64,000 nucleotides of DNA from Neoechinorhynchus agilis. Lineage: Eukaryota; Animalia; Acanthocephala. Below, one piece after another: positions 94-61,524 of this stretch (the stretch's first letter is position 1; the number at the start of each line of letters is the position of its first letter). The stretch lies in assembly GCA_051530055.1 (NCBI GenBank), contig CM121341.1, forward strand, positions 7,666,784 to 7,730,783, given 5' to 3'. The notes below the pieces were generated by a model, which saw nothing but the letters and a program-made list of their open reading frames with translations, had not been told where the DNA came from and did not search any database. The translations under genes and the position numbers were made by a program.

Positions 94-1522
94 ATACCAG
101 TGATGCCCAGACTCGCAGGCCAAAACGTATGACAAAAATTTTGAGTATGAATTAAGTTAAATTAGTTCATTTTATAAGAATTGAAAAGACAATAATTGGC
201 CTGCTCATAATCCGAGATATTTATGAGATGTCGGCAGTTGTTCTTTGGGCTAATGAGTTTCGGAATGTTTGGCTCTAAAGTTGTCAAATTGATAATGTGA
301 CCGGTCATTTTCAGTAATTCATTTCGCAAAATTTGAAAGCTTAAAACTCTAATAAAGATTTTTCAACAACAAAATTTGTTCGTCACATTTAAGTGCGAAT
401 AAAACACTTTAACAATTGCCCAGTTGAAGCCGGAAAACGGCGAAAGCTAGGAAAAAACTCTAGGTCGTATTTATCAAATTAAAATTAAGACATGCGAATG
501 GAAAATCGAGCAGCGATTCACGCTATTTTGTGAATAAAGGAATAAAAGTGCGGACCACATGCAATACCTTCCCGTGGGCCGGAAGGTCCTCATGGTTTTG
601 TGGGGGCTGTTAGGAACTTTACGATACAGAAATTAAAACTTTGCAAGGAAACTGAACCTTTTTTAAATGGATTTTCTTCAAAAATACCTTTATCCAGAGG
701 ACGATACTAAACTTGTTATTTTGTGTATAGATTTCGAATTTACAGTCCTCGTCATTTTTTAGTTATTATAAAAATTTGAGCTAGAAATAGAAATTAATGC
801 TTTGCAAGGAAACTGAACCTTTATTAAATGGATTTTCTTCAAAAATACCTTTATCCAGAGGACGATACTAAACTTGTTATTTTGTGTATAGATTTCGAAT
901 TTACAGTCCTCGTCATTTTTTAGTTATTAAAAAATTTGCGCTTGAGAAATAGAAATTAATGCTTTGCAAGGAAACTGAACCTTTTTTGGATGGATTTTCT
1001 TCAAAAATACCTTTATCCAGAGGACGATACTAAACTTGTTATTTTGTGTATAGATTTCGAATTTACAGTCCTCGTCATTTTTTAGTTATTAAAAAATTTG
1101 CGCTTGAGAAATAGAAATTAATACTTTGCAAAGAAACTGAACCTTTTTTGGATGGATTTTCTTCTAAAAATACCTTAATCCAGAGGACGATACTAAACTT
1201 ATTATTTTGTGTATAGATTTCGAATTTACAGTCCTCGTCATTTTTTAGTTATTAAAAAATTTGCGCTTGAGAAATAGAAATTACAGCTTTGCAAGGAAAC
1301 TGAACCTTTTTTGGATGGATTTTCTTCTAAAAATACCTTTATCCAGAGGACGATACTAAACTTGTTATTTTGTGTATAGATTTCGAGTGATTTTTTAGTT
1401 ATTAAAAAAATTTGCGCTAGAAAATTTGAGACTTTCCGGGGAAGCTGAACCTTTTTTGGATGGATGTTTTAAAATCAAATCCAAATGACGTCCCTTTTTC
1501 CTGTTGGGCACCACTGGACTAT
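94..1522 (-). other. Non-canonical hairpin-ended intron (AT...AT, 1429 nt) of DIS3
   Basis: Ends ATAGTCCAGTGGTGCCCA ... TGGGCATCACTGGTAT are inverted repeats; removal joins EDCLR|RGFRN at codon boundaries. Confidence 0.7.
641..1460. repeat. Tandem array, ~162-bp unit, ~5 copies, inside the DIS3 intron
   Basis: TTGCAAGGAAACTGAACC recurs at 641, 802, 964, 1126 (variant) and 1289. Confidence 0.95.
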
Positions 1523-2182
1523 TCTAAGACAATCTTCGAGTTCGGCAATGCCGAATCCTTTAACGTACTCTTCCATTGTGAATGTGGGATATCCTTTGGA
1601 TCTGGACGATTCCCGTCTTTTTTCATTGTCGCTTATTACAAGAACGTTAACGTGAACACCGTACTCGTTTTGAAGAAGATGGAGCTTATAAAACTTGACA
1701 ACGGCTAATAAAGCTCTAAAATTTCGGTCTTCGGCACTTTCGCCCATCATTTTCCTTACAAACGTATGACGGCTGTATTCGTTGAGAAAAAGAAAAAATC
1801 GTTTCCGATTGTTGTTGAGGAGAACTCGGAACTTCCGATAGACACTCAGTGATTTTTGTCGGACTTCTTCGAGGACACTAATCGGTACAATCATATCGAC
1901 AATGGCATCGTTTGCGAATATATCCGATTGAGCAACGATTGTATCTGCGTCGCAGATAAGGTAATGGGCGTCCGGGAATGCTTCGTTTGGAGGTTGAACA
2001 ATGAAGTCCGGATACGGAGGACGGCGGTCACGAGTACACAAACTAAGAACTTCTTCGGTACGGCAACTCGAACACAGCCGTGATCCACATTTTATGTCGT
2101 CACGAAGGTAATGCTCACGAACTGTTTTCCTTAAATGACCACGAGACGTCAAACTCAATGTAATCTGCTTAGTGGACGTCAT
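1523..2182 (-). CDS. DIS3: DIS3/RRP44 exosome nuclease, exon 1 (CR3 and PIN domain); the gene runs off the window start
   Basis: ORF 1475..2338 contains KTVREHYLRDDIKCG (DIS3 N-terminal signature), ICDADT and SVLEEVR. Likely ATG at 2182 (MTSTKQ...). The ORF track's extra N-terminus is satellite sequence. Confidence 0.9.
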
Positions 2183-2239
2183 ATCGAAAATCGATTTCTT
2201 TTTGCTCGCCAAAAAAATCAACAACGAATTCACGCGTTT

Positions 2240-59135: not shown

Positions 59136-59418
59136 TTTATCTTGAAAATTTTCGAGGAAAATACCTCACAAAACAATTGAACGATGAAAGCCAACGAAAA
59201 GGCCGAAAATTTTAACGATAAAAACCTATTTCTGAATCAAAGATCGCTAATTGAAACTGCGAAATTGCGATTTTAATATCATGGCATTAAATCAATAGAA
59301 AACTGCCTTTAAATAACACTAAAAAGTAAACTCTGATCAATAAAGGCAAATTCATTTGGTTGGCTTTCATCAGTGAATTGTTTTGTGAGGTATTCTCCTC
59401 GAAAATTTTCACGATAAA
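59136..59418. mobile_element. MITE-like element with ~60-bp imperfect TIRs
   Basis: TTTATCTTGAAAATTTTCGAGGAAAATACCTCACAAAACAATT ... AATTGTTTTGTGAGGTATTCTCCTCGAAAATTTTCACGATAAA. Confidence 0.75.
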
Positions 59419-60780
59419 AACCTATTTCTGAATCAAACACATCGCTAACTGAAACTATAATGAATAATTTCGTTACACTTTTTTGAAAGTATCGCTGTCA
59501 GGTGTCCAGGAAATGGAATTTTAAAGGTGTGGAAGCGGTCTATAAAATTCATTTATAAAAGTTTGTTTTACTTTTAGATCAAAATTCCTCTCAGCCTTTC
59601 CCTCCACTCCTTTTTCCCCATACTTCCCAATCTTCTCGAATATCATAAACTGAAATCTCTCCTACACCCACCCGACCAGACTCGTAATCCACTCCAAAAT
59701 CAATAACCGCATTGATTTATCCTTTCTGAACTCGAGTTCGGGGTTCAGAAGATGCTTCCATTGCTAGAGGACTTTAATGGAACATTTGAGATTTGAGGTC
59801 ACCAAATGATCGAAACCCAGACCTTCCACTGATGAAATCAGCGCTATGGACTCAAATTGCTCTAACGTTTTCAATTTACGGTCTTAAAGTGTTTCGTTAT
59901 AATGGCGAAATTCATTTATTTCGAAGATCTGATGTTACCGATGGCGATTGGGAAAATGTGTAGTCATCAAAACAACTTTATCGACTTCAGTGAGTGATAA
60001 AAAGAAATATCGATAAAATCAGTCACTCAACGAACTTAAGGTAAAGAGAAAATTGTTGAAATCTTCAAGTACATTCGTGACCAAGAGACTTTACAATCTG
60101 CTTCACTTTTAAAAATGTCTCAAGATTAACACGTAAAAGAAAATGGATTATAGAAATATGGAAACCTTTTGATAAAATAGACTGATAACGAACGAAGAAT
60201 GTCAATAAGCCCAGTGGCTATCGAGGAAAAAGCTTTGTGACCAAATTTCGTCAACGTATAAAGGTTGTAAGGTGAATTTAAGGTAACCCGAAATCCCGCA
60301 AATGATCCCCTTTTGCCTTATTTTTGAACATCCGTTTCATTCTCTATTTTAATAACTAATTGTTTATCGCTCGAAGAATATCCTAATATTTTGGAATCTT
60401 ATTCGGGTCGATTGTCCACAAACTCAAAAAAAGTCCATACGCAAATTCACAATTGCAACGTTTTATTTAGAAAAAAAGCTATTTCATTCAAAAGAAGCTT
60501 CAAATTTTTCACATTTTCTTAAAAAATGGATATTCCTTCTTCTTTTATATCAAATGTAAGGTTTATGCGAATCAATGGCAAGCGACATACCTTTTTGTTA
60601 AGGAAGTTTAAACGCTTAGTTGGTTCAATTGCCTGTAAATGTACTTTAGTCTTAATAAAAAGCAATCAGAAGTTGTTTAGAACGAATGGCAAACCTCAAC
60701 AGAACGAGGATCTGTCAAATTGGGATTTTGGTATCGTTTTAGATTTTTGTATTTGGAATAGTTCCATATTTCAAGGTTTT

Positions 60781-61524
60781 TTAAATTCTCAACCTTTTTA
60801 AAAGCGAACATAACGCAAAGACGGCGAAAACATTTCTTACTTCATTAAGCAATTTATTGAAATCATTGCCTTCCTCCTTCGTAGACGTGCATAAATCCAC
60901 TTTAGAGTAAACTTTAGAGCAAAGGTTCTTTGAACGAAATATATTAGTTTTATTGATGCCTTCAAATACCTCATCGATGATTTGTCTCAACTTATCTTCC
61001 TCGATCGGTTCGTCTCGAACTAATTTTTCACTTTGTTCGACCTCGAATACCTTCATTTCTTGAAGCATTTCGTCTATTGGCAGCTCGATCAATTCCATGG
61101 TCCTATGAATTCTATTAATGTTCTCCAGGCCTTTTTGAAGGTAATTGTAGTAAGGAATTGTGGATAACTATTTAAAGATTTATCGAAAGTTGTCTTTCAA
61201 TTATTTTTACCGATTGTTCACGTTCGACTTCACCCAGTGCATCTTCAGCTTCGTCAATAAATTTTGGTTCGTCGATCTCTTTATAAAATTCAATTGTTTC
61301 CCTTGACCTAAAAAAATGGGCAAACTTGGTCAAAATCGTTAGTATTTTAAGCGAGAGAGAGAGCATAAAACTTTTGCCTTTAAAAAAACAGACATTTGTT
61401 GGTATTCATCCTTATCCTCTTTTTCTATCTCTTCTATGTATTTCAACGCTTCAAGCAATCGTTCTCGGTTGCATTTAGTTCCTGAAATTAGTCCTTGCAA
61501 TGTTTTTTTATCCATATTGTTCAC
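60781..61524 (-). CDS. Hypothetical acidic helical protein; three ORF pieces joined by hairpin introns at 61316-61380 and 61138-61207 (ends uncertain)
   Basis: Both introns have inverted ends and fall on codon boundaries: SVFL|FFRSRE and EQSV|QKGLEN. Confidence 0.65.

What the first reader, a model, noticed from the sequence alone, without database searches (positions are those of the whole stretch)
94..61380. Window-wide system of non-canonical, hairpin-ended A...T introns with no shared terminal sequence
Seen: at each homology-defined reading-frame break in DIS3, BAZ1-like, convertase, MANBA (3), EF1A-like, TFIIB-like, PRP19 (2), VPS52 (2) and an unknown gene (2), the removed segment has imperfect terminal inverted repeats of about 10-25 bp with G:U pairs, roughly in register (offset 0-2 nt). 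Best-fit ends start with A and end in T: AT-AT, AG-AT, AA-AT, AC-AT, AA-TT, AG-CT, AT-GT. No two introns share terminal sequence, and I found no convincing GT-AG intron. Known: the larvacean Fritillaria borealis has mostly non-canonical, transposon-derived introns; euglenid nonconventional introns and Amoebophrya introners also pair their ends. Inference: splice sites here are defined by RNA structure. If the organism is not a fritillariid, this is an independent, undescribed animal splicing system. If it is one, the A...T consensus with intron-specific stems still refines the model.
Basis: partly seen in the sequence, partly recalled or inferred. Interest (0 to 1): 0.95.

Follow-up and report, generated by a model that had tools for sequence, protein, structure and literature searches.

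The report
Hairpin-ended non-GT/AG introns in an acanthocephalan
In this stretch of the thorny-headed worm Neoechinorhynchus agilis, most interruptions of conserved genes lack the usual GT...AG intron ends and instead have two ends that can pair with each other; this has not been described for this animal group and may be why its published gene models are broken.

Summary
The window lies on chromosome CM121341.1 of Neoechinorhynchus agilis (Acanthocephala), not in a tunicate. The core observation holds. PRP19 (2 junctions), VPS52 (junction 1), an EF1A-like GTPase, beta-mannosidase, a proprotein convertase and DIS3 are interrupted where no GT-AG or GC-AG solution preserves conserved residues. 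The public BRAKER annotation splits these genes there or forces GT-AG introns that delete motifs. In 7 of 10 such junctions the two intron ends are specifically complementary: cognate duplex -20 versus non-cognate -10.7 kcal/mol, and a random-genomic null gives P of 0.003-0.03 per junction. Three GT-AG introns show no such pairing.

Ordinary GT-AG introns do exist (VPS52 junction 2, annotated; GT-AG solutions also exist in two unknown genes). Three junctions have no significant pairing. The A...T consensus is not distinguishable from the freedom left in placing boundaries. G:U pairs are not in excess over A:C mismatches (9 vs 7), so nothing shows RNA-level selection. No RNA data were reachable, so exact junctions and mechanism stay inferred.

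Best reading: Euglena/Fritillaria-like nonconventional introns, arisen independently in a spiralian animal. The genome papers I could read do not mention them.

The parts
97..1517 (-). DIS3 nonconventional intron, about 1.42 kb. The 5' arm CCAGTGGTGCCCA (1505-1517) pairs with the 3' arm TGGGCATCACTGG (97-109). In-frame alternatives are 94..1520 (AG..AT) and 61..1520 (AG..CT). It contains a 162-bp x4.7 tandem array at 628-1386.
   Evidence: dG -30.5, P about 0.001; in-frame and in-register, score 12.5, P = 0.006.
11841..12174 (+). BAZ1/Acf1-like junction 1, about 333 nt. The boundary is unresolved and there is no homology constraint. Short TTAATGCGG/CTCGCTTTAA complementarity is not significant.
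   Evidence: P = 0.27.
19071..19138 (+). Convertase nonconventional intron of 58 nt. It can slide over 11 equivalent positions, from 19071..19128 to 19081..19138. GCAGCGATGCAT (19071-19082) pairs with ATGCAACGCTGC (19127-19138). No GT donor or AG acceptor is usable.
   Evidence: z = -3.9; P = 0.008.
27892..29692 (-). Beta-mannosidase junction B, a nonconventional intron of about 1.8 kb. In-frame options are 27893..29690 (TA-flanked), GA..GT and GA..AG. It contains a 375-bp x4.3 tandem array at 27933-29554.
   Evidence: z = -1.8; P = 0.027. The annotation breaks the gene here.
30471..31500 (-). Beta-mannosidase junction A. Boundaries are unresolved and there is no significant end pairing. The annotation breaks the gene here.
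   Evidence: P = 0.91.
31915..32722 (-). Beta-mannosidase junction 0. No GT lies between the conserved FIPI residues and the stop. The only GT-AG solution (GTAAGT at 32750) deletes about 22 conserved residues. End pairing is not significant.
   Evidence: P = 0.21.
47026..47281 (-). EF1A-like GTPase nonconventional intron of 254 nt. Options are AC..AT (47028..47281, product IRG) or GA..AG (47026..47279, product ITG). CAACUGUUCUCUUG pairs with CGAGAGAGCUAUUG.
   Evidence: z = -5.4; P = 0.009. The annotated model forces GT..AG at 47323..47046 and deletes the DTPG motif.
54507..54570 (-). PRP19 intron 1. It is 60 nt, in frame, and contains a stop at 54549-54551. Five equivalent positions are AA-TA, AA-TT, TA-GT, TT-AG and AT-CA. 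It is flanked by the direct repeat TTA.
   Evidence: 261.2 bits vs 246.7 for the best GT-AG; z = -1.9; P = 0.031.
52339..54047 (-). PRP19 intron 2, 1709 nt. Best options are CT-AA, AC-TA, AA-AT and TA-GA; GG-AG and GT-GA score 5 bits lower. A 25-bp interrupted helix joins its ends. It contains a 197-bp x7 tandem array at 52481-53862.
   Evidence: 213.1 bits vs 193.9 for the best GT-AG; z = -3.9; P = 0.003. The annotation splits PRP19 here.
57615..57679 (+). VPS52 junction 1, a nonconventional intron of 65-74 nt. A 15-bp helix, GUGAAGGUUGACAAU with AUUGUUAAUCUUCAC, sits exactly at the ends of the in-frame GT..AC option. No AG acceptor is available.
   Evidence: 49.5 bits vs 20 for GT-AG; z = -4.6; P = 0.002; MFE z = -4.2. 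The annotation splits VPS52 here.
58603..58661 (+). VPS52 junction 2, an ordinary 59-nt GTGAGT..GTGTAG intron without end pairing.
   Evidence: z = -0.75.
61168..61210 (-). Unknown gene. A 43-nt GTAAAA..ATAG phase-0 solution exists, and other GT donors share the same acceptor. There is no end pairing.
   Evidence: (z = +0.1; the window tested was shifted 2 nt from the intron).
50934..50987 (-). Likely 54-nt GT-AG intron (GTACGT..CGCAG) in the annotated 152-aa gene of unknown function. It is one of two single-intron solutions that fit the annotated length; the other is 50542-50595. There is no significant end pairing.
   Evidence: z = -1.6.

Best explanation
The window is nuclear DNA of the acanthocephalan Neoechinorhynchus agilis. 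Its conserved genes carry two kinds of intervening sequence.

A minority are ordinary short GT-AG introns.

The majority, about 8-10 of about 13 junctions examined, are nonconventional introns of 58 nt to 1.8 kb. These have no GT-AG, GC-AG or U12-type ends and share no terminal sequence. In most cases the 5' end region is complementary to the intron's own 3' end region, as an interrupted helix of 8-25 bp. The long ones are short unique paired ends wrapped around an expanded tandem array.

These segments must be removed precisely, because only that restores frame and conserved residues in essential single-copy genes.

I infer that they are removed from the pre-mRNA, and that the end-to-end helix brings the two cut sites together. 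The most likely machinery is a U2-type spliceosome with relaxed terminal-dinucleotide requirements, as in Fritillaria. The inverted ends are probably relics of terminal-inverted-repeat insertions.

Shown: the breaks, the absence of canonical solutions, the intron-specific pairing, and its absence in GT-AG introns. Inferred: removal at the RNA level, the exact cut positions, the machinery, and the origin.
For: Organism:
- A window ORF and the annotated protein P0121 [Neoechinorhynchus agilis] both map to CM121341.1.
- L002 is identical to the window over its overlap.
- The top PRP19 hits are bdelloid rotifers.

No canonical solution:
- HMM-scored enumeration gives the best non-canonical junction versus the best GT-AG as 261.2 vs 246.7 (PRP19 i1), 213.1 vs 193.9 (PRP19 i2) and 49.5 vs 20 (VPS52 j1).
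- No GT-AG, AG-AC or AG-AT option lies within 6 bits of the best, and no U12 5' motif sits at any junction.
- The BRAKER annotation splits PRP19, VPS52 and MANBA at these points. It also forces GT-AG introns that delete the DTPG motif of the GTPase and part of the conserved region of PRP19.
- No intact second copy of PRP19 or VPS52 was found in the protein collection.

Pairing:
- Cognate versus non-cognate duplex energy is -20.05 vs -10.7 +/- 2.9 kcal/mol.
- Shuffle and genomic nulls support it.
- In-frame, in-register helices occur at VPS52 j1 and DIS3.
- Three GT-AG introns are unpaired.

Spliceosome-like remnants:
- GTGAGA plus a pyrimidine tract and AG in PRP19 i2.
- GTGAAG at VPS52 j1.
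- A pyrimidine tract plus AG before the 3' arm in the EF1A-like intron.

Precedents: F. borealis and Euglena.
Against: - No transcript evidence was reachable. No N. agilis cDNA-derived protein is in the searched collections.
- Boundaries are ambiguous, with 5-25 equivalent options per junction.
- MANBA jA, MANBA j0 and BAZ j1 lack significant pairing.
- PRP19 i1 and MANBA jB are only marginal (z about -1.8 to -1.9).
- G:U-type mismatches (9) do not exceed A:C-type mismatches (7). The helices therefore show no signature of selection on the sense RNA.
- Five of seven junctions also admit a G[ACG]-AG solution, so the helix may be auxiliary rather than defining.
- The sample is one 64-kb window plus 5 kb. 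One extra junction outside the window (CLC channel) has an in-frame GT-AG solution.
Confidence: 0.55

Rival explanations
1. The segments are excised by structure-guided machinery that does not use the spliceosome, as proposed for Euglena nonconventional introns. The intron-end hairpin is recognised, and the intron may leave as a circle.
For: No conserved termini. Intron-specific end pairing is present only in the non-GT/AG class. Boundaries are slidable because of short direct repeats, as in Euglena. VPS52 j1 and the convertase have no AG acceptor at all.
Against: The Euglena code N3-CDG...CHG-N5-6|R fits only DIS3, by inspection of the junction sequences against the code read. Several introns keep 5' splice-site-like or pyrimidine-tract-plus-AG features. 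The only animal precedent, F. borealis, uses the U2 spliceosome.
Confidence: 0.15
2. A spliceosome with a relaxed 5' site (G[ACG]-AG, as in Oikopleura) removes most of them. The end pairing is incidental, a leftover of their origin.
For: In-frame GA-AG, GG-AG or GC-AG solutions exist for the EF1A-like gene, MANBA jB, DIS3, PRP19 i2 and PRP19 i1 (the last at -4 bits). There is no G:U excess.
Against: No AG-ending solution exists for VPS52 j1 or the convertase. GA and AG are common dinucleotides, and each junction has many options. The pairing is absent from the true GT-AG introns.
Confidence: 0.12
3. The segments are removed from DNA, not RNA. They would be germline-limited, IES-like elements excised precisely in somatic nuclei.
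For: The segments are short and non-coding, with inverted ends, and interrupt coding sequence. TA or TWA direct repeats flank PRP19 i1, PRP19 i2, the EF1A-like intron and MANBA jB. The inverted repeats show no RNA-strand bias. The DNA came from whole worms rich in germline tissue.
Against: I know of no report of precise DNA elimination in acanthocephalans or in any other animal (own knowledge, not a search). The TA-flank model is out of frame for DIS3 and does not fit VPS52 j1. TA dinucleotides are common in this AT-rich (about 64% A+T) DNA.
Confidence: 0.05
4. The genes are broken (pseudogenes or segregating insertions), or the segments are assembly artefacts. In either case nothing is spliced.
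For: The BRAKER models are fragmentary, and BUSCO completeness is low (47% metazoa).
Against: The flanking ORFs are long, intact and conserved. Every break is cleanly removable in frame. The genes include PRP19 and DIS3, which are essential in other organisms (general knowledge), and no second copy of PRP19 or VPS52 was found. The assembly is an Illumina-supported hybrid. Transcriptome BUSCO is higher than genome BUSCO (71% vs 58% eukaryota).
Confidence: 0.06

Closest known systems
Euglenid nonconventional introns (Euglena gracilis / E. agilis)
   Same: They lack GT-AG ends. The intron ends pair so that the exons are brought together. Boundaries are slidable because of short direct repeats. 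They coexist in the same genes with conventional GT-AG introns that lack the pairing, and they are the majority class.
   Different: The Euglena motif (CAG at +4 to +6, CTG at -8 to -6, a purine starting the next exon) is not generally present here. The host is an animal, not a euglenozoan. Here the helices often start 0-4 nt from the ends. The long introns carry tandem arrays.
Fritillaria borealis non-canonical introns derived from introner transposons
   Same: An animal genome in which most introns are non-GT/AG. The splice sites coincide with terminal inverted repeats of insertions. Standard annotation fails on them.
   Different: No AG/AC or AG/AT solution lies within 6 bits of the best for the three HMM-scored junctions, and the YAY signature is not consistently present at the boundaries I inspected. 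I found no shared terminal sequence or multi-copy family in 64 kb. Direct-repeat flanks are inconsistent (1-4 nt; TTA or TAA in two). The lineage is unrelated (Spiralia: Syndermata versus Tunicata).
Amoebophrya introners
   Same: Non-canonical introns with inverted-repeat ends and short direct repeats at the boundaries.
   Different: Amoebophrya terminal repeats fall into conserved, strain-specific families. Here every intron has its own arms. The host there is a dinoflagellate.
Oikopleura dioica G*-AG introns
   Same: A relaxed 5' dinucleotide with a retained 3' AG is possible for 5 of the 7 junctions that have paired ends.
   Different: Two junctions have no AG option at all. End pairing is not a described feature of Oikopleura introns.

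Membership tests
U2-type GT-AG (or GC-AG) spliceosomal intron | GT (or GC) at the 5' end and AG at the 3' end, giving an in-frame product that keeps conserved residues | tested here: not met
   For PRP19 i1 and i2 and VPS52 j1 the best GT-AG is 14.5, 19 and 30 bits worse than the best junction. The convertase, the EF1A-like gene and MANBA j0 have no usable GT donor or AG acceptor. The feature is met for VPS52 j2.
U12-type AT-AC / GT-AG intron | A conserved 5' splice site [AG]TATCCTT and a TCCTTAAC branch site | tested here: not met
   None of the motif hits in the window lies at a junction.
Fritillaria-type introner-derived intron | AG/AC or AG/AT termini, with a YAY triplet upstream of the 5' site and as the last three bases | tested here: not met
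   No AG-AC or AG-AT option lies within 6 bits for the three HMM-scored junctions. AG..AT is possible only for DIS3.
Fritillaria-type introner-derived intron | Terminal inverted repeats | tested here: met
   Seven of 10 junctions have significant intron-specific end complementarity.
Fritillaria-type introner-derived intron | Target-site duplication and membership of a multi-copy element family | tested here: inconclusive
   Direct repeats are TTA, TAA, an imperfect 11 nt, or only 1 nt. No second copy was found in 64 kb + 5 kb. The rest of the genome was not searchable.
Euglenid nonconventional intron | Base pairing between the intron ends | tested here: met
   The pairing is absent in three GT-AG introns.
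Euglenid nonconventional intron | The code 5'-N3-CDG ... CH'G-N5-6 | R(exon) | tested here: not met
   By inspection of the sequences against the code read, it fits only DIS3 (GTC-CAG...CTG-GTATC|G, in frame). It does not fit VPS52 j1, the EF1A-like intron, PRP19 i1 or i2, or the convertase.
Euglenid nonconventional intron | Excision independent of the spliceosome, with a circular intron product | not testable with these tools
   This needs RNA data or experiments.
Ciliate-type internal eliminated sequence (removed from DNA) | Absent from somatic DNA; TA-bounded, with a TAYAGYNR-like end consensus | not testable with these tools
   TA flanks are possible at 4 of 7 junctions, but the model is out of frame for DIS3. 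No comparison of somatic and germline DNA is available.

The most novel reading that the evidence does not exclude
Acanthocephalans, and perhaps their relatives, have an intron-removal pathway that reads an intron-specific end-to-end hairpin rather than terminal dinucleotides. It would be either spliceosome-independent, like Euglena's, or act on DNA like ciliate IES excision. It would process most introns of the genome. Much of the 'rampant gene loss' inferred from BUSCO in these parasites would then be an annotation artefact.
Probability: 0.2. Interest if true: 0.95.

Novelty: new variant of a known kind. Interest (0 to 1): 0.8.

Why it matters
1. [quoted passage not shown] It would have arisen independently of Fritillaria. 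Its Euglena-like split into paired nonconventional and unpaired conventional introns would give a new system for asking how splice sites can be defined without conserved termini.

2. It has a practical consequence. The public annotation of this genome, made with a GT-AG-bound gene finder, splits or mutilates PRP19, VPS52, MANBA and the EF1A-like GTPase exactly at these junctions. BUSCO completeness is 47% for metazoan genes. Published conclusions about large-scale gene loss in acanthocephalans rest partly on such models and should be rechecked with splice-model-free alignment. MetaEuk-based BUSCO is less sensitive to splice motifs, so the size of this effect is open.

Tried and rejected
- Same-species transcripts: the PRP19 and VPS52 searches found no N. 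agilis cDNA-derived protein, only the annotated fragment P0121.
- Taxon from exact ORF look-ups: two ORFs failed.
- Fritillaria origin: rejected. The supplementary protein tables of the tunicate paper were of no use for this.
- VPS52 has no match in the PDB by sequence.
- Rfam found only a tRNA-Lys gene and no snRNA.
- U12 motifs, the Euglena CAG/CTG code, the Fritillaria AG/AC + YAY pattern and a TA-duplication model were each tried as a single rule for all junctions. None fits all of them (and inspection).
- G:U excess as evidence for selection on the RNA: not found.
- Wide-window inverted-repeat searches lose significance, so they were not used.
- Reconstructing the BRAKER models of the unknown gene and of the MANBA N-terminal part gave 129 and 273 solutions, which is uninformative.
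- The DIS3 frame was mis-set. It was redone.
- No upstream zinc-ribbon exon was found for the TFIIB-like gene.

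
Full report
**What the window is.** The 64-kb window is AT-rich animal DNA.
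- a DIS3 N-terminus
- a BAZ1/Acf1-like protein
- a furin-type convertase
- beta-mannosidase (MANBA)
- a TFIIB-repeat protein
- an EF1A-like GTPase
- PRP19
- VPS52

An exact-ORF look-up places the window on NCBI assembly GCA_051530055.1, chromosome CM121341.1 (19,375,080 bp). The VPS52 search returned the annotated protein P0121, 'hypothetical protein ACOME3_001829 [Neoechinorhynchus agilis]', on that same chromosome. Its locus is base-identical to the window where they overlap. The best PRP19 relatives are bdelloid rotifers, as expected for a syndermatan. The organism is therefore an acanthocephalan, not a tunicate. Its genome paper describes a 46.2-Mb hybrid Illumina/ONT assembly with three chromosomes, annotated with BRAKER, and never mentions introns.

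**Are the breaks real, and are they non-canonical?** I built HMMs from 40 homologues each of PRP19 and VPS52. I then scored every in-frame, stop-free donor/acceptor pair around three junctions.
- PRP19 intron 1 is a 60-nt in-frame insert carrying a stop. Five equivalent placements score 261.2 bits. The best GT-AG scores 246.7 and inserts 8 residues into a conserved helix.
- PRP19 intron 2 is 1709 nt. The best junction scores 213.1, against 193.9 for the best GT-AG.
- VPS52 junction 1 is 65-74 nt. The best junction scores 49.5, against 20 for GT-AG, and there is no AG acceptor at all.
- Within 6 bits of the best there is no GT-AG, AG-AC or AG-AT option. No U12 5' motif lies at any junction.

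PDB alignments fix the EF1A-like junction at ...ITQAI|(T/R)GVSL..., MANBA junction B at ...VDNW|...|APRALL..., and the convertase at ...KEQRC|TINSTIDIY.... None of these has a usable GT-AG solution. MANBA junction 0 also has no GT between conserved residues and a stop.

**The public annotation breaks at the same places.** It splits PRP19 into 251 + 252 aa, VPS52 into 276 + 422 aa, and MANBA into at least two separate models. Where it does bridge a junction, it forces GT-AG introns. These delete the DTPG (G3) motif of the GTPase and about 24 residues of conserved PRP19 sequence beyond the 60-nt insert. No intact second copy of PRP19 or VPS52 exists in the protein collection. The assembly is Illumina-supported, and every break can be removed cleanly in frame. 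Pseudogenes and assembly errors are therefore unlikely.

**Are the ends paired more than chance allows?** I chose 26-36-nt windows by homology only for six well-defined junctions. The RNAduplex results are:
- Cognate 5'/3' pairs average -20.05 kcal/mol. Non-cognate pairs average -10.7 +/- 2.9. Every cognate pair is the best in its row and column, and 0 of 265 derangements match the cognate mean.
- Dinucleotide-shuffle z-scores are -1.9, -3.9, -4.6, -5.4, -1.8 and -3.9.
- Against window pairs drawn at random from the window at the same spacing, P = 0.031, 0.0033, 0.017, 0.0093, 0.027 and 0.008. My hand-computed Fisher combination is about 5e-7.
- DIS3 has a 13-bp helix (CCAGTGGTGCCCA / TGGGCATCACTGG; dG -30.5, P about 0.001). 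The intron bounded exactly by that helix is in frame (P = 0.006).
- VPS52 junction 1 has a 15-bp helix exactly at the ends of the in-frame GT..AC option.

Three GT-AG introns show no pairing: VPS52 j2, the unknown gene, and the gene at 50491-51003 (z = -0.75, +0.1, -1.6). MANBA jA, MANBA j0 and BAZ j1 do not reach significance, although their boundaries are also the least constrained. No intron end recurs elsewhere in the window. The three longest introns each enclose their own tandem array.

- VPS52 junction 2 is a textbook 59-nt GTGAGT..GTGTAG intron, used in the annotated protein.
- The main break in the unknown gene has a 43-nt GTAAAA..ATAG solution.
- I found no intron in the TFIIB-like gene.
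- 'In register within 0-2 nt' holds for VPS52 j1, DIS3, the EF1A-like intron and PRP19 i2. It does not hold for the convertase, where the helix spans 68 nt around a 58-nt intron, and it is weak for PRP19 i1 and MANBA jB.
- The A...T 'consensus' comes from picking, among 5-25 homology-equivalent placements, the one whose first and last bases pair. That pair will often be A and T in AT-rich sequence. I did not test this formally.
- With scoring that treats G:U-type and A:C-type mismatches alike, the arms contain 84 Watson-Crick pairs, 9 G:U-type and 7 A:C-type mismatches. The G:U pairs therefore carry no evidence that the sense RNA, rather than the DNA, is the conserved object.

**What it most likely is.** The pattern has four features: a majority class of introns without conserved termini whose ends pair, boundaries that slide over short direct repeats, conventional GT-AG introns coexisting in the same genes, and pairing confined to the nonconventional class. 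This is closest to Euglena nonconventional introns. Among animals it is closest to the introner-derived non-canonical introns of Fritillaria borealis.

It is a member of neither. The Euglena N3-CDG...CHG-N5-6|R code fits only DIS3. The Fritillaria AG/AC, AG/AT plus YAY signature is absent. There are no shared terminal repeats.

Some introns keep spliceosome-like remnants: GTGAGA plus a pyrimidine tract and AG in PRP19 i2, GTGAAG in VPS52 j1, and a pyrimidine tract plus AG just before the 3' arm of the EF1A-like intron. Five of seven junctions also admit a G[ACG]-AG solution. I therefore favour a relaxed U2-type spliceosome helped by the helix. An unknown machinery like Euglena's is less likely, and excision from DNA is a distant possibility. 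All of this is inference, because no RNA data could be reached.

**Novelty.** The N. agilis, Pomphorhynchus laevis and Seison genome papers, the syndermatan gene-loss paper, and full-text searches contain nothing on non-canonical introns in this clade. Those papers interpret low BUSCO scores as gene loss (47% metazoa in the genome; eukaryota 58% in the genome versus 71% in the transcriptome). The broken models seen here suggest that part of that signal could be an annotation artefact.

Noticed in passing
window 46071-47641, 51586-54845, 56823-59028, 29661-33234: The deposited BRAKER gene models are split or carry forced GT-AG introns that delete conserved motifs, exactly at the nonconventional junctions. 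Low BUSCO scores and the 'gene loss' claims for this species may be partly an annotation artefact.
   Followed up: partly
window 628-1386, 27933-29554, 52481-53862: Each of the three long nonconventional introns (DIS3, MANBA jB, PRP19 i2) is mostly one tandem array with its own unit: 162, 375 and 197 bp, at 96-98% identity. Many other arrays fill intergenic space (2258-7065, 9037-10795, 37257-38607, 42377-43671, 48077-50303, 55029-56538).
   Followed up: partly
window 54042 / 52351, and 47170-47050: Canonical-looking splice signals lie inside or overlap two nonconventional introns. In PRP19 i2, G|GTGAGA together with a pyrimidine tract and CTGAG| would be out of frame. The EF1A-like intron contains CTGAG|GTAAAT and TCTCCTAG| just before its 3' arm. 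This could be a nested (twintron-like) arrangement or relics of older introns.
   Followed up: no
window 57596-57609 with 57688-57704: In the MFE fold of VPS52 junction 1, the exon sequences on either side of the intron helix also pair (about 14 bp). This puts both candidate cut sites in an internal loop between an exon-exon helix and the intron helix. PRP19 i2 shows a 5-bp exon-exon extension (AUUCU/AGAGU).
   Followed up: no
window 13352-13366: A perfect palindrome, CGACACAATGTGTCG, sits at the BAZ1-like frame break (junction 2). AATCCGA/TCGGATT complementarity flanks it at about 13306 and 13393. The intron boundaries could not be set because there is no homology.
   Followed up: partly
window 15605-18063, 21721-22203 and 24002-25085: Retroelement fragments with reverse-transcriptase-like ORFs (assigned from their translations only, not by a family search). 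Two near-identical copies (ORFs at 17251-17538 and 24367-24654 have the same translation over the part shown) bracket the convertase gene.
   Followed up: no
window 50294-50366: A tRNA-Lys(CTT) gene starts inside the last unit of the 203-bp x11 tandem array at 48077-50303.
   Followed up: no
L002 20866-20958 (about window +68.6 kb, outside the window): A CLC chloride-channel gene has a frame break with an in-frame GT-AG solution (T|GTACCA...GTTGATCAG|). An internal UUCGAGAA/UUUUCGAA hairpin there is not at the intron ends. The annotated model nevertheless starts downstream of the break.
   Followed up: partly
window 19069-19082 and 19127-19139: The ends of the convertase intron are at once an imperfect direct repeat (GAGCAGCGATGCA / ATGCAACGCTGCA, both reading Q-R-C) and an inverted repeat. 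This gives 11 equivalent splice placements.
   Followed up: partly
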